Below are positions 9,781 through 56,700 of a DNA stretch of 64,000 nucleotides, one piece after another (the stretch's first letter is position 1; each line of letters opens with the position of its first letter). The stretch covers positions 123,132,001 through 123,196,000 of the forward strand of contig NC_043001.1 of the NCBI RefSeq assembly GCF_006345805.1, written 5' to 3'. The notes below the pieces were generated by a model, which was given only the letters and a program-made list of their open reading frames with translations, was not told the DNA's origin and did not search any database. Made by a program: the position numbers and the translations under genes. The stretch is from Octopus sinensis (lineage: Eukaryota).

Positions 9781-10272
9781 ATACACATATATAAACTTAT
9801 ACTTATAAATATACATATATGGACATGTATGCATAGAATCACCAAACATTGTATCGTATTGAGGTTCGATATACTCTACAAAACCACTCGAAATCCGGAC
9901 CAGAACCGGAAACCAAAGATTGAAACTAGTAAAAGAATAATGAAAGAATATAGTCCTGTAAATCTCAGAGATAATTTGAAAAACATTCATCAATATCGAA
10001 GGAGTTAAATGAAATCTATTCATATTTCACTTCATTAAATACACATAAGATAAGAAAAAAAGAAAAAAACAAAACAATATAGAGGCCCCACTTCCAGTAA
10101 AAATACAAAAAGGAAGAAAAAACAATGCAAATTAAAAAACAAATCAAAAACTCACCATCACCAATATTGGCAAACATTTGAGGATCTGAAAAAGAGTGAA
10201 AGAAATATAAATATACTATTGATCTTATTGCTGTTGTTGTTATTATTGTTGATGTTCTTGTTATTCTTATTG

Positions 10273-10672: not shown

Positions 10673-12831
10673 ATAGACGTCACACAGTATGCAATATCGT
10701 GAGGTTGTTGATTGAAGATTTTGTGTCTACCGGGGGTTTGTACTACTTGTCAAGTCACAACAAGGGCCTCAGACAGATAGTACCTTACGCCATATGCGTG
10801 CAAGTTCCAAGTAATGCCTTTTGCAATACACCTAGATTGTAGGATATTTCTAAAGTTTTCAGATGTCTTTTAGATTGAGTGGTATTGAACCCAATGCTCC
10901 GATGACAATAGGGATAACCTTTATATCTGACTCTCGTAGCTGCTGCATCTTAGCGATATCAATTCTCAGGTTTCCATATCTATCAGCCTTTTCTCTTTCG
11001 TTCATGATGATGTTTTGACCTCCTGGCACTGTCACATCAATTATTGGGCATTCTTGTTTGTCCCTTCTAAAGGTTACTATATCCGGCCTTCGGCGCTCTA
11101 ACACCTTGTCTATCTTGAAGTCAAAGTACCAGAGGATTTTTGCCTTCTCCTTTTCGTCCATTACCTTTTTCAGTGCATGTTGGTACCAAACACCTGTAAC
11201 CTCATATCTGAAGGCATAGTAGCCAGTGGAGGTTTTGCGCTACTTTGTCGTGTCTAAGCTTGTACTCTTTCTGCGCAAGACTTTCCCAAGCACTAACAAT
11301 ATGAGTCACGCTTTCGACCTTCTTCCCACACATTCTTCAGAGGTTCGTTGCACTTATGTGGTAAATATTCTTTTTCACTGAGTTGGTATTCAATGCCTGG
11401 TCCTGGGCAATGATGATTAGGCTTTCACCATTCTTTTTTAAGTCACCCTTGTTAAGTCACCTTCATGATGCTTCCTGGTCTTTTAATTTGTTGGTTTCAC
11501 GGTGGAACCGACCATGTAATTCCATGCGGAGTAGGGTTTCTTCTCTCTCGATGGCTGTTCTTGATCGGAATTCATGGACACTCTCAAGTCCATTTTTGTT
11601 AAATCCTTCTGCATTAGCAGCATACTGTAGCAGGTCTTGTTTGCTGTTCATGAAATATTCTGCCATGTTTCTTCCTTCACTGCTGATACACTCCCGTACG
11701 CTATTTAGCCCCTCTTCATGTAGAGCCTGCGTACATTCGCCTTAGGGTGGAGGGCACCATACATTATCATTGTCTTTCGGGTAGTACGGTCGAGTTGGTT
11801 AATCTCTGCTTGTGTCCATTTCAGGGTGGGTGCACTATAGCGGCCTACAGCAACCACCCATATATTGATGGCAGTCACAAAGTTCCTTGAGTTGAGTTTT
11901 GATTTCAAGAGAAGTTTAGGACGTTTGAAATATGCAGTGATGACCCTGTCTTTCATTTCATTATGAAAGATATTATCAAACTTCAGGATCCCAAGCTACT
12001 TGTACCCATCATCATCAGGGTCTTCCAATCTCTCTCTGTTTGGCAATTTGATGCCCCTACAATTTACTCTTTCCTCCCGCTTCAAAGTAAGCACCGCACA
12101 CTTCCAGATACCGAATTCCATCCCTATATCCTTGCTGCACATTTGCACATTTTCAACCAGCCTCTCCATTTCAGGCTCTGTTTCTGCGAACAGTGTTAAA
12201 TCATCCATGAAGAGAAGGTGGTTGAGACGAGGTCCATTCTTTCTCAGCTCATAGTGCGCGTTGACTTTGCGTAGGATTTTAGAAAGTGGGATCAAAGGTA
12301 TACCAAAGAATAGAGGTCAACAAGAGTTTCCTTGGTAGATATCTCTTTTGCTTTTTTGATTGTTACCTCGGCTAAGTGCTGGTTGTTACATGAAAGACAT
12401 ATTTTCCAATTGTTCTTAATCAGTGCACACACGTTCTCAGCTTTTCTACACATGTCGAGTGTTTCCAAAATCCACGAATGCGGCAACATATTGTGAGCTT
12501 TCTTGAAGTCTATCCAGGCCATGCATAAGTTTTTTGGTACTGTTTACAGTTCTTCATTATAACGTTGTCTATCACAAAGTGGTCCTTGGTGCCCTTGGAT
12601 CCTTTTCTGCATCACTTTTGTTCTACTGGCAGTAGATCCTTTTCTGCAAGGAACGTATATATTTTCTCTGCAAGGATACCTGTTAATACATACTTTCCAT
12701 AGGAGATTAAGACAAGCAATGGGTCGGTAATTGCCAACCTCATTACCCTTTGACAGATATTTCACTAACAATGTTGTTTTTCCCTCTACAACCCACTCCG
12801 GAACTACATCGCTTTGTAAGCAATTGTCTAA
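10673..12831 (-). mobile_element. 5'-truncated, degraded R4/Dong-like non-LTR retrotransposon (RT + CCHC + restriction-like endonuclease)
   Basis: Minus-strand motifs NYRPIACLNLLWK, AWIDFKKAHNMLPHSWI, LNHLLFMDDL, LLKSKLNSRN...LDRTTRK, decayed zinc knuckle *RMCGKKVESVTHIVSAW, and RLE RRPDIV..IIDVTVP...KVIPIVIGALG. Many stops and frameshifts; 3' end runs into (TAC)n(TAA)n. Confidence 0.9.
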
Positions 12832-13315: not shown

Positions 13316-13567
13316 ATTTAATATCGATGTCCATCGGATCGTGTCCATTACATTCATAAACGAAGGAAGTCTTTTCTTCACCATTAGCCGAATGACAGAT
13401 CTTCTTTTCTGTGACTGGACAATTGCTAAACTGGATGCGTTCTCCGGCACAGGTGATATTCGTGGCATTCTTTCCTGTAGCGACAGTGACGTTGCAAGAC
13501 CGGAAACGGAAGTCTTTATCGCCAGATTGAATCCAGGGTGACCAGGGACCCCACTTAGCTGAAGATT
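13316..13567 (-). CDS. Internal exon encoding an atypical thrombospondin type-1 repeat plus the start of another Cys-containing module
   Basis: Translation (E)SSAKWGPWSPWIQSGDKDFRFRSCNVTVATGKNATNITCAGERIQFSNCPVTEKKICHSANGEEKTSFVYECNGHDPMDIDIK(C): WxxWxxW, RxRxC and CxG motifs of TSRs. Acceptor attcttcttccacag|AA, donor T|GTAAAT; 252 nt, phase 1-1. Whether it belongs to the same gene as the FS exon is inferred from strand and phase only. Confidence 0.8.
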
Positions 13568-24472: not shown

Positions 24473-26369
24473 CTTATAAAAAGCAAAGTTTGTACGTTGA
24501 CCGCTGAAAACACTAAATAAAATTGATAATATTTCAGGATTTCCGTGTCAATTAAACTAATTTGACCATTCTGCAGATGACCGTGCACTTATTTTCCGAA
24601 AATGGAATGCGGGGATATGTGTGTGAGCCATGTTGGTGGTGTTTTGGCCCCTATTTCTAGCAAACCATGTACTGTTTATTTCACTATAAAAGATACTCCA
24701 CCAATCACTCAATCCACTTCCAACTTTCTCTAAATTTATACATTACACTTATTCCTTTGATGTCGCCGCCAGACCTCTGCTTCCTCTCTGTCTAAATGTC
24801 GCTCTCTATGTCTCTATATCTCACACTATCTCGAAGCAAAAATCCTCACTGGATGTGGTAAGGGAGACATCGTATTTATACCTAGAATAGCGCTAATACC
24901 AGCAGATGTCTCCTTTCGTTTCAAACGATTGCAATTCCCAGTGAGACTCAGTTACGCATTGACCCATTAACAAGTCCAAAGGTCAAACACTGCAGGTTGT
25001 CGGTCTGCAACTAGACGAGTGCTGTTTCTCACATGGTCAATTGTATGTAGGTTGCTCCAGAGTAGGAACCCACAGAAACTCTTCATATATGCTTCCCCAC
25101 CCAACAAAGAAAGCTAAAAACATTGTATATACCAGTGCTTTGCAACCTTTTTCATTTGCGGGATACTTATATTGTTTTCAGAATTCGGCGGCACACCAGA
25201 ACTAAAAATTTGAAGGTTAGACATATCTTTACTTATCGTTCTCATAAAACGTTGAAGATAAGATCTACAGCTCTCTTTTATAGTCATCGCCTATGTTTTC
25301 AAATTATACTCATTCAAACAGACACTTTTCTTAATACATCAATGCGAGGCACGTTTTTATAATGAGGACATGGATAGTTGCCTTATTGATAGTGGAGTAA
25401 GTTTACACAGAATTTTTCGCTGTAGTGAAGTCTTTTTACAGGGGCAATGTACAAAACCTTTCCGTGGAGCCCACACCCAGAGATACGCAAGCAACTATTT
25501 TTCCCTAACGCGTTGTTTTTGACCATGACACTTAAAATTCTTGACTGTTATCAAGGTCTAAGAAGGCGCTATTCGAGCGCAAGAATATCTGAAGCTTTAA
25601 AAAAAGTCATGAAAATCTTCTCATGTGGCAATGTTGTATTCAAGTTGTCTTGTTGGATTCAGTGAAATTTTTACTAGACTAATAATTGACGCCCAGCCTT
25701 CATTAATGCCCTAACGTTTCGACACTGTCACTGGACTCAACATGATTATCGTAGTTATCATCAATACCGTATTTAATTATTATTTACCCTTACATTATTA
25801 TTTAATTATTATTTACATCTTACATCTTTCTCTTCCGGTACTGTAAATTAACAAAGTGGGCCACCATTCTTCTTTATATTGATTACATTTATTTTTCCTG
25901 TTTTATATATGTGTGTTTACAAGATTATTCTTTCTCCCTTTTCTAGGTCCCCTCCAGTTCAAAGGGATTTTGTGTAGTTGTTTCACCCATTCTCAAGACA
26001 AGAGATGACCATTTTTATTCAATAGTTTGGCCAGAAAAAGAAGGTCAAAGTTCTTGGTCTTTTCTTAAGGTTTCCGTGTTTGGTAGGAGAATAAGTACGA
26101 AACACAATTCAGTGGTTATTGCTGTAGTTGTATGCAGCACATCAAGATACTGTTAGCAACTCAGAATCAGTACCTCGAAAACATCTAAAAACCACATTAT
26201 CGTATTAAATCGAGTAAATGATCAAATCACCGATGCCAAAATATTTTAAGTATGTCTTAATCATTTAGGTTACCAAGACAACATTCTACGAAATATGGGA
26301 GGAGATAGCGAAAACTTGAATATCAGCGATCTGTTTATTGCTTGTTCTGAATGTCCAACTGTCAATGAC

Positions 26370-34993: not shown

Positions 34994-35329
34994 GTGTGTG
35001 TGTGTAAACACACATATACATACGCGTATATATGTATATATGCATATTCAGTTAGGTATGTACATGTTAATATGTCTGTATGGATATGTGCATATGTATC
35101 AAGCTTGTAGAACGTAGAAAGTTAAGTGGATTGGAATATATCACTGGGTCGTCCATTTTGGTGAATGCATATATAATATATATCTATCTATATCTGGATT
35201 TTGGTATGTTTGTCTATATATGTATATTATATATATATATATATAATATAATATATATATATAATATATATATAGTTACAATATTGTGATAATTATGAAA
35301 GTCCTCAGCTGTTTAGGTTGTCCACGTAC

Positions 35330-35375
35330 TGTTCATTGCAGTTCTTCTTGGATGATTCTGGTTTCGCTTTTACAC
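35330..35375 (-). CDS. Candidate small exon following the FS exon: (C)VKAKPESSKKNCNE
   Basis: Acceptor gttttttgtgtgaattacag|GT would complete the split TGT Cys codon of the FS exon. Donor CA|GTACGT (phase 2), or read-through to TGA after QYVDNLNS. Unique, less AT-rich island; no homology support. Confidence 0.25.
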
Positions 35376-39169: not shown

Positions 39170-39406
39170 AGAAATGCTTTGGTTTTTCTTCAATAAGTTT
39201 CTGCTGAAGGCAAGAAGTTCGTTTCATCACACAAAGGTTTGTGTGAAGGATTCCATCGGATCCGCATACGGCGATATCGTGGCCTTTTCGTTCCTTGGGA
39301 TCCTCATTTTCTTTCTTGCAGTCGAAATCACAGTTGCATTGGAAGTCTTCTGAGTCATGATCACAAACTCCGCCATACTTGCAGTTATATGAATTGCACT
39401 GGTTCT
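39170..39406 (-). CDS. Internal exon encoding a follistatin module (FOLN + Kazal), agrin/TMEFF(tomoregulin)-like
   Basis: Translation ENQCNSYNCKYGGVCDHDSEDFQCNCDFDC...AVCGSDGILHTNLCVMKRTSCLQQKLIEEKPKHF(C): 10-Cys FS pattern (last Cys codon split by the intron) with the VCGSDG Kazal motif. Acceptor tcttttcatgttag|AG, donor T|GTAAGT; 237 nt, phase 1-1. Confidence 0.9.
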
Positions 39407-42024: not shown

Positions 42025-43700
42025 GCCATTGATGAGATTGACACAAACTCAGCTGCTGGACCTGATGGATTCCCAGCGATCCTTCTCAAATCGTGCAAAC
42101 GAGCCCTTGCAAAACCGCTACAGCTTCTTTTTCAGAGCTTTCTTGCAAGTGGTAAGCTCCCAGTCAAACTGAAAGAGGGGGTAATATGCCCTATCCATAA
42201 GGGAGGTAGCAGAGCAGATGCTAAAAAATTTAGGCCTATCTCTCGACCTCACACATCAGCAAAGTCATGGAACGAATAGTCCGTCAGAAACTAATCATGT
42301 TCCTTGAAGAAAATGACTTACGTCTGTCTGACACCCAGCATGGATTTCGACAAGGTGAGGCTGCCTAACACAGCTCCTGCAACACTATGATGGGGTGTTG
42401 AAACAGCTACTAAATGGCTCAAATGTGGATGTAATATATCTGACTTTGCAAAAGCCTTGATAAAGTCGACCATGGTATGATCTGTCACAAACTGCGTGGT
42501 CTCGGCATAGGCGGGAAACTTGGAGAGTGGCTGCACAACTTCCTAAAAGACAGAAAACAGGCAGTTGTGAGCAATGGAGCCACCTCCAGGGAACGCAAAT
42601 AACAAGCGGTGTCCCACAGGGCACTGTCTTGGGGCCACTGATGTTCATAGTGCCCTTTCAGACATGCCTTCAGTTGCTACGATGACCACCCTTGCTAGCT
42701 ATGCAGATGACACAAAAGTCTCCCACGCAATACAAACCCTGAAAAATATGCGCATCTGCAACATGAGCTGGACACAATATAACAGGTGGGCTGAGGACAA
42801 CAACATGCAGTTTAATGCAGGTAGTTCCAGGCCCTGCGCTACTGGCACACAAAGGTAAATGACGTGAAGACTGGATACACTGGCCCAGGAAGAATTGCAA
42901 TCCCTGAGTCAAAATCAGTGCGTGACCTGGGCATTGACATGAGCAATGATGCATCTTTCCAAATGCATATTGCTAATCTGGTGATATAAAATGCAGACGG
43001 CTAGCGGGATGGCTTCTGGAACTTCCTCAGAACAAGGAGAAGGACAAGAGGTGGAGACACTAATGTCCCATAAAAACATTTGCCTCAGCCGCTTGGACTA
43101 CTGCTCCCACTTTGGTCACCACACAATATAAAACAAACAGCAGAACTCGAAGCAACTCAGAGAAGCTACACAAAGAAATCGTCTCAATGCAAAATGTCAG
43201 CTACTGGGAAAGACTGAAGGTATTAAACCTCTTCTCCCTGGAGCGGAGGCGGGAGAGATATGCAGTGATATACATCTGGAAAATCCTGGAGGGTCTTGTC
43301 CCAAACTTTGGCATTCAAAGTTACTCCAACCGCAGAACGGGGCGCCCGCGTGGTGCCAAGGATTCCAACATCACCATCAAAATACAGGTCCAGATACTGC
43401 AACAGCTTGGGTTTCAGAGGACCACAGCTCTTTAACATCCTCCCTAAATGCCTGAGAGACTTACATGTGTGGATGTGGGTTTCTTTAAAACTAAACTGGA
43501 TCTCTTCTTGTTGGGAGTCCCAGATGAACCTACCTCACGACAGTAGACACGATGCGGGCAGCAGCATCGAACTCCCTTGTGATCAAGTGCCACGTATCAG
43601 AGGTGGATTCACAAACTAGTGTAGCTCATTCAGCGGTGGTGCCCCAGCATGGCCGCGGCCTTCGGGCTAAAACATTTTAAGGATTTAAGGATTTAAGGAT
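42025..43700 (+). mobile_element. 5'-truncated CR1-group LINE (RT and C-terminus) with (TTTAAGGA)n tail
   Basis: [26 protein letters not shown]...FRPIS, DVIYLDFAK, SGVPQGTVLGP, YADDTK, LNLFSLERRRERY motifs across several frameshifts; tandem 8-mer tail 43675-43700. Confidence 0.92.
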
Positions 43701-49795: not shown

Positions 49796-50031
49796 GACAC
49801 AAGTTCAGATATATAATTTTTCTCAGAGTTACGGCCTATGAGATATTAGGTTAAGACAGCTCTAAGGACTTGTGAATATATATATAATTTGGGGCGGTGC
49901 ATCCTATGGACCTTGTTTTTTGAAAAGCGATACAAATTGAGGATATTTTAGCTGCTTTTTCGAGCTGTTTTGTTATATTGTAATGTTAATGTAATGTAGT
50001 AAATGAAATTATGAATTTTGTTTTTGCTTAC

Positions 50032-50067
50032 CTCCGGAACCCGAACCAGATCCTGATAATTCTTCAT
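50032..50067 (-). CDS. 36-nt internal exon encoding (D)EELSGSGSGSG(E): acidic Ser-Gly glycosaminoglycan-attachment-like segment
   Basis: Minus strand: strong acceptor ttttaattttcttttcag|AT and perfect donor GAG|GTAAGC; phase 1-1. The four Ser codons are all different (TCA, TCT, TCG, TCC), so this is not a DNA microsatellite. Splicing G|+AG to the 39406 exon gives Glu in frame. Confidence 0.8.
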
Positions 50068-50087
50068 CTGAAAAGAAAATTAAAATT

Positions 50088-50118
<31 letters not shown>

Positions 50119-56239: not shown

Positions 56240-56700
56240 GTATACAGAAAGAATTGTTGGCCCAGTCAGGGTGCCTGAAAAAAGTTTAAAGAAACCGCAG
56301 TCGCTTGCTGCAATCTCCTGAAGGATGTCTTGCATCCCTGGCTAGATGACACTGCTTTCACTTCTAAAGAATCTCGTATTCATGCATGACAACGCTCCCT
56401 CCCACTCTGCTAAGACCACCCAAACATTCCTAGGGTCTCATGGCATACAAAGTGAAAAGTTGATGGTGGGCCGCTATCATTTCCGGATCTCAACCCTATC
56501 GAAAATTTTTAGTCCATCATTAAACAAGATGTTTATGTTGATGGGCACCAATTTGCGTCGAAAGATGTCTTAAGGGTGATTATCAAAGCTGTAGCAGTGG
56601 CAGTCCAACCTGCTGCTATTATGAAATCGACAGATTCCATAACTAATAGGGTTTTTAAAGTTATCTGTCGAAATGGCGCTCATGTGGCTAAATCAATAAA
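56240..56700 (+). mobile_element. Tc1-like transposase remnant, TRT (DD37E)-like
   Basis: IVGPVRVPE, CNLLKDVLHPWLDD, LVFMHDNAPSHSAK...EKLMV(W)PLSFPDLNPIENF*SIIKQDVY..GHQFASK; 37 residues between the second D and E after repairing a 1-nt deletion. Confidence 0.8.

What the first reader, a model, noticed from the sequence alone, without database searches (positions are those of the whole stretch)
50032..50067. 36-nt symmetric exon that is purely a glycosaminoglycan-attachment cassette
Seen: DEELSGSGSGSGE with strong splice sites, phase 1-1 and four different Ser codons; it is missed by the ORF track. Established: Ser-Gly repeats flanked by acidic residues are xylosylation sites for heparan/chondroitin sulfate; TMEFF proteins carry such a stretch just before a follistatin domain, and agrin combines FS domains with GAG sites. 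Inference: because skipping keeps the frame (upstream G|AG still gives Glu), splicing could switch the protein between proteoglycan and non-proteoglycan forms.
Basis: partly seen in the sequence, partly recalled or inferred. Interest (0 to 1): 0.7.

Follow-up and report, generated by a model that had tools for sequence, protein, structure and literature searches.

The report
Ser-Gly micro-exon in octopus proteoglycan-like gene
The 36-base exon is real and already sits in annotated octopus gene models; it encodes a conserved acidic Ser-Gly cluster that probably carries a sugar (glycosaminoglycan) chain, but nothing found here shows it works as a splicing on/off switch.

Summary
On the minus strand, 50067→50032 reads cag|ATGAAGAATTATCAGGATCTGGTTCGGGTTCCGGAG|gtaagc, a phase 1-1 exon encoding (D)EELSGSGSGSG(E). 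It belongs to an uncharacterised molluscan secreted protein (Octopus sinensis LOC115211596, O. bimaculoides LOC106884390). Five consecutive exons of this gene lie in the window and are 100% identical to the O. sinensis RefSeq protein.

The protein is neither agrin nor TMEFF. It has a signal peptide, a Ser/Thr-rich region, one follistatin (FS) module, a TSP1-like module and a weakly nuclease-like C-terminus.

The cassette plus FS exon aligns with human agrin 669-740, where agrin's heparan-sulfate Ser-Gly cluster lies. The (SG)4 core is conserved between octopus and cuttlefish, with 6 synonymous and 0 non-synonymous codon differences. GAG attachment is therefore plausible but unproven.

The switch idea is weak:
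- Nine gene models include the exon, as do ten distinct cuttlefish mRNA-derived ORFs, one of them seen in 80 assembly blocks.
- Only two computational models skip it.
- A second, invariant SGSG cluster upstream would survive skipping.

This is an ordinary new member of a known kind.

The parts
50032..50067 (-). 36-nt phase 1-1 micro-exon encoding (D)EELSGSGSGSG(E), the second Ser-Gly cluster of the protein (P0162 residues 210-221)
   Evidence: The peptide is identical in O. sinensis, O. bimaculoides and Argonauta proteins.
50068..50087 (-). 3' splice site: pyrimidine tract and cag acceptor (taattttaattttcttttcag)
50026..50031 (-). 5' splice site gtaagc
39170..39406 (-). 237-nt phase 1-1 exon encoding the follistatin/Kazal module (E)NQCNSYNCKYGGVCDHDSEDFQCNCDFDC...KHF(C), with an acidic loop DHDSED
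   Evidence: Pfam Kazal_2 E=3e-6, above the curated cut-off. The best solved relative is agrin FS8.
35330..35375 (-). Micro-exon encoding (C)VKAKPESSKKNCNE.., 46 nt as read. It appears 2 nt short of what the orthologues require (..NEH|E..).
13316..13567 (-). 252-nt phase 1-1 exon encoding the WGPWSPWIQSGD... TSP1-like module
   Evidence: Weak profile matches to UNC5A and thrombospondin-1 TSRs. No Pfam TSP_1 hit.
10156..10185 (-). 30-nt phase 1-1 micro-exon encoding (Y)PQMFANIGD(D)

Best explanation
The feature is a real micro-exon, included constitutively or at least predominantly. It belongs to a mollusc-specific secreted protein (octopus LOC115211596 / LOC106884390).

Domain order of the protein: signal peptide; a long Ser/Thr-rich region predicted disordered, with a first invariant SGSG cluster; this cassette; one follistatin module; a TSP1-like module; and a large, weakly nuclease-like C-terminal domain.

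The cassette places four Ser-Gly dipeptides directly in front of the folded FS module. Acidic residues precede them (DDN-DEE), one Glu follows, and the FS module's own acidic loop (DHDSED) lies about 20 residues downstream.

Inferred mechanism:
1. In the secretory pathway, xylosyltransferase modifies one or more of these serines.
2. The linkage tetrasaccharide is extended into a glycosaminoglycan. Heparan sulfate is the more likely type, because repeated SG with nearby acidic residues favours it and because the positionally equivalent cluster in agrin carries HS.
3. The cassette therefore adds a second GAG-bearing site next to the FS module. It is not an on/off determinant of proteoglycan status.

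Shown here: exon reality, phase, conservation, inclusion in mRNAs, and the alignment to agrin's cluster. Inferred: xylosylation, GAG type and constitutive splicing in octopus tissues.
For: - Exon and phase.
- Identity to the O. sinensis RefSeq protein over five exons.
- Inclusion in models: 9 gene models from 3 octopod species contain the exon.
- Inclusion in mRNAs: 10 distinct cuttlefish mRNA-derived ORFs contain it. One was assembled in 80 blocks, and ten different SRA runs were shown.
- Selection on the (SG)4 core: 6 synonymous and 0 non-synonymous codon differences between octopus and cuttlefish, while the flanking Ser/Thr-rich region is poorly conserved.
- Alignment to agrin: the cassette plus FS exon aligns as one stretch with human agrin 669-740, including CGSGGSGSGED. 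Agrin's HS-bearing Ser-Gly cluster lies between FS7 and FS8 (PMC4859157 section 14).
- Same arrangement elsewhere: it is also found in proteins annotated as tomoregulin-1 (fish, bird), agrin (spider) and agrin-like (Lingula, Ciona). An SG cluster precedes 9 of 16 acidic-loop FS modules against 3 of 69 others.
- Enzyme preference: XT1 prefers acidic neighbours and Gly at -1 and +1, and repeated SG enhances HS assembly (PMC13038410 and the reference to Zhang, David and Esko 1995 in it).
- Structure: no secondary structure is predicted for residues 1-227 of the orthologue (a low-confidence model).
Against: - No biochemical evidence exists for any GAG on this protein.
- Bivalve homologues lack SG at this exact position, so the site is not essential to the family.
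- Octopus transcript reads were not available. Constitutive inclusion in octopus therefore rests on RefSeq models and on cuttlefish mRNAs.
- Contig assemblers favour major isoforms, so minor skipped forms could be missed.
Confidence: 0.58

Rival explanations
1. Regulated cassette exon. Tissue-specific skipping of the 36-nt exon changes the GAG complement of the protein.
For: - The exon is symmetric (phase 1-1), and skipping gives G|AG = Glu.
- One O. bimaculoides model (A0A0L8I3K9, P0164) has exactly the skipped junction SSVDDN|ENQC.
- The O. vulgaris model P0152 skips the cassette plus the FS exon.
- The gene does undergo alternative splicing elsewhere: 34-aa repeat exons, a 10-aa insert and a short isoform.
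- CD44 exon v3 is a precedent for an SGSG site controlled by splicing (PMC2531186).
Against: - None of 10 cuttlefish mRNA ORFs and none of 7 RefSeq models skip it.
- P0164 starts at an internal Met and runs into the intron. P0152 has an aberrant N-terminus and also omits a 30-nt exon. Both look like prediction artefacts, and micro-exons are commonly missed.
- The splice sites are strong.
- Every exon in the window is phase 1, so symmetry is not specific to this one.
- An invariant upstream SGSG cluster would remain, so there would be no proteoglycan versus non-proteoglycan switch.
Confidence: 0.1
2. The Ser-Gly run is only a flexible, possibly mucin-type O-glycosylated, hinge between the disordered Ser/Thr-rich region and the FS module. 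It carries no glycosaminoglycan.
For: - The cassette lies at the end of a long Ser/Thr-rich stretch with no predicted structure.
- Gly/Ser runs are common linkers.
- Bivalve homologues have no SG at this position.
- No sequence motif reliably predicts GAG sites (PMC13038410).
Against: - A mere linker would be expected to drift in length and composition. Instead (SG)4 is exactly conserved, with 6 synonymous and 0 non-synonymous changes between octopus and cuttlefish, while neighbouring residues diverge.
- The acidic flanks and the match to agrin's mapped HS cluster (PMC4859157) are specific to GAG sites.
- The association with acidic-loop FS modules across three protein families suggests a functional unit.
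Confidence: 0.28
3. The feature is not a real exon: a chance open frame with AG/GT ends inside an intron.
For: It is only 36 nt long, and an (ATC)10 microsatellite lies 20 nt upstream.
Against: The encoded peptide is present in annotated proteins of three octopods and in spliced cuttlefish mRNAs.
Confidence: 0.01

Closest known systems
Agrin: Ser-Gly cluster between follistatin modules 7 and 8 (HS attachment)
   Same: - An acidic-flanked SG repeat directly N-terminal of an FS module with an acidic loop.
- One continuous alignment to human agrin 669-740.
- The Lingula agrin-like protein reads CDELSGSGSGETVC.
- A phase-1 intron lies just before the FS module in both.
   Different: - The octopus protein has one FS module and no NtA, laminin-EGF, SEA or LamG domains.
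- In the Lingula agrin-like gene the cluster is split by a single phase-1 intron between two FS exons. It is not a stand-alone exon.
Tomoregulin-1/-2 (TMEFF1/2)
   Same: SG clusters (for example DNGSGSGEGEYEGSG) precede the second FS module, whose loop is DEDSED. Identity to the query is 41-43%.
   Different: TMEFF proteins have two FS modules, an EGF domain and a transmembrane helix. None of these follows the FS module in the octopus protein.
CD44 variant exon v3
   Same: An exon that supplies an SGSG heparan-sulfate site with acidic flanks (PMC2531186).
   Different: The v3 exon is 117 nt and is demonstrably alternative, with a mapped exonic enhancer. Here no skipped transcript was found, and another SG site exists in constitutive sequence.
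Testican/SPOCK and other FS-containing proteoglycans
   Same: Secreted proteins that combine one FS module with GAG sites (PMC4859157 section 28).
   Different: SPOCK GAG sites are C-terminal, and its other domains (EC, thyroglobulin) are absent here.

Membership tests
Glycosaminoglycan attachment site (xylosyltransferase substrate) | Ser followed by Gly, with acidic residues nearby and no basic residues | tested here: met
   DDN-DEELSGSGSGSG-E. There is no K or R within the cassette or its immediate flanks. The criteria are taken from PMC13038410 and PMC2531186.
Glycosaminoglycan attachment site (xylosyltransferase substrate) | The protein enters the secretory pathway | tested here: inconclusive
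   The orthologues start MAERKLILPCWGLFLACFFLGYVRTA.., a hydrophobic N-terminus that is modelled as a helix at residues 10-35. No dedicated signal-peptide predictor was run. The first exon is outside the window.
Glycosaminoglycan attachment site (xylosyltransferase substrate) | A GAG chain is actually attached | not testable with these tools
   This needs enzymatic digestion or glycoproteomics.
Alternatively spliced cassette exon | Length divisible by three, with the same phase at both ends | tested here: met
   36 nt, phase 1-1.
Alternatively spliced cassette exon | Transcripts both with and without the exon | tested here: not met
   All 10 mRNA-derived ORFs and 9 gene models include it. Only 2 computational models skip it. 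No octopus read-level data were available.
Alternatively spliced cassette exon | Conserved flanking intron sequence | not testable with these tools
   Orthologous genomic DNA could not be fetched. The Argonauta gene spans 347 kb, and the O. bimaculoides look-ups failed.
Agrin | NtA or TM start, nine FS modules, laminin-EGF, SEA, EGF and LamG domains | tested here: not met
   Only one Kazal_2 domain is found, and there is no LamG or laminin-EGF. The C-terminus is unrelated.
TMEFF / tomoregulin | Two FS modules, an EGF domain, a transmembrane helix and a short cytoplasmic tail | tested here: not met
   There is a single FS module, followed by a TSP1-like module and a domain of about 470 aa.
Follistatin/Kazal module | Pfam Kazal_2 above the curated cut-off, with the Cys pattern and a VCGSDG core | tested here: met
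   27.6 bits against a cut-off of 22.8. Matches to agrin and follistatin.
Thrombospondin type-1 repeat | Pfam TSP_1 match, with W-x-x-W-x-x-W and the Cys pattern | tested here: inconclusive
   The WGPWSPW motif is present. There is no Pfam hit. Profile hits are UNC5A at E=0.003 and thrombospondin-1 at E about 0.8.
DNA/RNA non-specific endonuclease-like (ENPP NUC-type) domain | Pfam Endonuclease_NS match | tested here: inconclusive
   2 of 7 family members match, best E=0.05. The ENPP3 nuclease-like region matches at E=0.5. UniRef names fragment P0166 in this way. The structure model is too poor for a fold search.

The most novel reading that the evidence does not exclude
The acidic Ser-Gly cluster plus acidic-loop FS module could be a portable heparan-sulfate-priming unit shared by agrin (FS8), tomoregulins (FS2) and this molluscan protein. 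In cephalopods the priming peptide has been isolated on its own symmetric micro-exon, which would allow tissue-specific skipping to tune the number of GAG chains next to the FS module.
Probability: 0.08. Interest if true: 0.45.

Novelty: new member of a known kind. Interest (0 to 1): 0.22.

Why it matters
The finding gives a testable functional hypothesis for an unnamed, mollusc-wide secreted protein: it may be a two-site proteoglycan with an FS module. It also documents that the agrin/tomoregulin arrangement 'Ser-Gly cluster directly before an acidic-loop FS module' recurs in a third, unrelated architecture.

There is a practical lesson too. 30-46-nt phase-1 micro-exons in roughly 10-25-kb (or longer) cephalopod introns are dropped by some annotation pipelines, as the O. 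vulgaris model and the 2015 O. bimaculoides model show. That can mimic alternative splicing.

Nothing here changes what is known about GAG biology or splicing.

Tried and rejected
- Word-indexed protein search with the 92-aa window peptide found nothing. The exhaustive HMMER search was needed.
- I first thought the gene was agrin, from the PDB match. I rejected this once the orthologue P0001 showed the full architecture.
- TMEFF was rejected for the same reason.
- A regex and six-frame hunt for further Kazal, EGF or laminin-EGF exons in the window found none.
- Fetching orthologous genomic DNA to compare the intron flanks failed. The Argonauta gene is too long, and P0164 and P0151 are not on record.
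- The Winzen 2003 paper is not held. A review was used instead.
- AlphaFold on a six-sequence alignment gave mean pLDDT 36.5. I therefore ran no fold search and make no fold claim for the C-terminal domain.
- Pfam on other long ORFs confirmed only one reverse-transcriptase fragment.
- No paper mentions the gene identifiers.
- The sigma-70 promoter scan is irrelevant to a eukaryotic intron.

Full report
**Observation.** The feature is on the minus strand. From 50067 down to 50032 the sequence is ttttaattttcttttcag|ATGAAGAATTATCAGGATCTGGTTCGGGTTCCGGAG|gtaagc. It is 36 nt long. In phase 1 it encodes (D)EELSGSGSGSG(E), using the four Ser codons TCA, TCT, TCG and TCC. Both splice sites are close to consensus. 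A run of three or more SG occurs only once in all six frames of the window. The DNA is unique in the window, and Tandem Repeats Finder does not call it a repeat. It does call an (ATC)10 microsatellite at 50088-50118 in the upstream intron.

**The gene.**
- The next coding exon downstream on the minus strand is 39406→39170. It is 237 nt, reads tgttag|AGAACCAGTGC...CATTTCT|gtaagt and is phase 1-1. It encodes a follistatin/Kazal module.
- A word-indexed protein search found nothing. An exhaustive HMMER search found P0001 (Argonauta hians, 871 aa), which is 80% identical over the whole 92-aa query, cassette included.
- Searching with P0001 gave six further homologues: O. bimaculoides LOC106884390, an O. 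vulgaris model, a cuttlefish cluster assembled from RNA reads, a further RNA-read-derived sequence most similar to the Mytilus protein, and the Mytilus and Nucella proteins. The O. sinensis orthologue LOC115211596 (P0162) was then found as a member of the O. bimaculoides cluster.
- Mapping P0162 on the window gives five consecutive minus-strand exons, all 100% identical at the protein level (boundaries):
  1. 50067-50032, the cassette;
  2. 39406-39170, the FS module;
  3. 35375-35330, encoding VKAKPESSKKNCNE;
  4. 13567-13316, the WGPWSPW module;
  5. 10185-10156, encoding PQMFANIGD.
- The exons before and after these lie outside the window. The window is therefore from O. sinensis or the very close O. 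vulgaris, and the exon is already part of RefSeq models.

**Architecture**. The protein has, in order:
- a hydrophobic N-terminus;
- about 200 residues that are Ser/Thr-rich and have no predicted structure, containing a first cluster DSDEAEDxIHSGSGDD whose SGS is invariant in all seven molluscan sequences;
- the cassette;
- one FS module;
- a short linker;
- a TSP1-like module, with only weak profile matches;
- a domain of about 470 aa with weak Endonuclease_NS/ENPP-type similarity.

It is neither agrin nor tomoregulin.

**What the cassette resembles.**
- The cassette plus FS exon aligns as a single stretch with human agrin 669-740. LSGSGSGSGEN-QC lies over CGSGGSGSGEDGDC, directly before FS8.
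- The review PMC4859157 (section 14, citing Winzen et al. 2003) states that agrin's cluster carrying mainly HS lies between FS7 and FS8.
- Among the 150 best HMMER hits, an SG cluster within 20 residues upstream is found for 9 of 16 FS modules with an acidic loop, against 3 of 69 other FS modules. Fisher's exact test gives 5e-6, but the cases are not phylogenetically independent, and the hits were selected with a query that contained the SG run.
- The sources name these proteins tomoregulin-1, agrin and agrin-like.
- In the Lingula agrin-like gene the cluster is not a separate exon. One phase-1 intron splits it (...TCA G|gtagat...cacag|GT TCA GGA GAA). The stand-alone micro-exon is thus particular to this gene, at least relative to that agrin.

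**Evidence of selection.** In the cuttlefish mRNA L001 the equivalent codons are GAA GAG GAA TCA TCT GGT TCC GGT TCC GGT TCG GGC. Over the eight (SG)4 codons there are six synonymous and no non-synonymous differences from octopus. The preceding roughly 40 residues align poorly. Bivalve homologues have no SG at this exact spot and lack the acidic FS loop.

**Splicing.**
- The exon is present in all six O. bimaculoides RefSeq isoforms. These differ only by 34-aa N-terminal repeat exons.
- It is also present in an older RefSeq model, in the O. sinensis model and in the Argonauta model.
- It is present in all ten distinct cuttlefish mRNA-derived ORFs that span the site. One of these (P0168) is listed in 80 collection blocks, and ten different SRA runs were shown, all on 3-kb intronless contigs.
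- Two models lack it. P0164 (A0A0L8I3K9) reads SSVDDN|ENQC, but it starts at an internal Met and reads through into the intron. P0152 (O. vulgaris) joins SSVDDN-G-VKAKPE, has an aberrant N-terminus and also lacks the 30-nt exon. These look like micro-exons missed by predictors, although I cannot prove that.
- Phase-1 symmetry is not specific to the cassette. Four of the five exons here are phase 1-1 as read, and the fifth is by orthologue evidence.
- Even if the cassette were skipped, the invariant upstream SGSG cluster would remain.

**Mechanism (inferred).** Xylosylation of cassette serines in the secretory pathway would be followed by GAG polymerisation. HS is favoured by the SG repetition, by the acidic surroundings (PMC13038410 and its reference to Zhang, David and Esko 1995; PMC2531186) and by analogy with agrin. 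This is unproven.

**Verdict.** The finding is an ordinary new member of a known kind.

Noticed in passing
window 35326-35335 (minus strand): The micro-exon ends ...AATGAACA|gtacgt. All orthologues read ..NEH|E.., and a cuttlefish intron-retention ORF implies ..CAT G|gtac. No canonical GT-AG pairing in the window keeps the frame into the WGPWSPW exon, so the window looks 2 nt short here. This could be an assembly indel or a real frameshift allele.
   Followed up: partly
window 10156-50067 (minus strand): Of the five exons of this gene in the window, four are phase 1-1 as read (36, 237, 252 and 30 nt). The 46-nt one is phase 1-1 only by orthologue evidence, given the 2-nt discrepancy. The four introns that lie wholly inside the window are about 3.1, 3.8, 10.6 and 21.8 kb, and the two flanking introns run off the window (more than 13.9 kb upstream, more than 10.1 kb downstream). 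This is a classic exon-shuffling layout, so in-frame skipping is possible for any of them.
   Followed up: yes
P0152 (O. vulgaris CAI9723461.1) and P0164 (O. bimaculoides A0A0L8I3K9): These public gene models omit the 36-nt exon. P0152 also omits the FS exon and the 30-nt exon. They are probably annotation artefacts that mimic alternative splicing.
   Followed up: partly
P0151, P0157-P0161 (O. bimaculoides isoforms X1-X6): The isoform lengths 1007, 973, 973, 939, 905 and 871 aa differ by multiples of 34 aa. The cause is alternative inclusion of up to four tandem 34-aa N-terminal repeat exons (ADDLPFLKNDTELVNFTIPQPPEQTTVRVHSSTS-like). This region lies outside the window.
   Followed up: no
L001-L011; P0170, P0171, P0175, P0179, P0180 (cuttlefish mRNA ORFs): Two further transcript variants exist. 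A short form ends after the micro-exon (...NCTEHEIEIRNVVKSAGFN*), so it would contain only the mucin-like region, both SG clusters and the FS module. A second form has a 10-aa insert, GKNRVRGTRI, near the N-terminus.
   Followed up: no
L012 26504/27794 (Lingula anatina agrin-like gene): A phase-1 intron falls inside the DELSGSG|SGE cluster, between two FS exons. The position and phase are similar to the intron that follows the octopus cassette.
   Followed up: yes
window 50088-50118: A perfect (ATC)10 microsatellite, (GAT)10 on the gene strand, lies in the intron only 20 nt upstream of the cassette's acceptor tract.
   Followed up: no
window 11999-12316 (minus), also 10862-12831, 42300-43600, 24760-25200, 56346-56570: The introns carry transposon-like open frames. 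Only the reverse-transcriptase fragment at 11999-12316 was confirmed (RVT_1, E=9e-7, just under the curated cut-off). The others gave no Pfam hit.
   Followed up: partly
alignment A1 columns about 728-736 (P0162 YRIGHLLPP): In the weakly nuclease-like C-terminal domain, the His of the R-I-G-H motif is Gln in the cuttlefish and bivalve homologues. If the fold is nuclease-like, the domain is probably non-catalytic, as in ENPP proteins. This is speculative.
   Followed up: no
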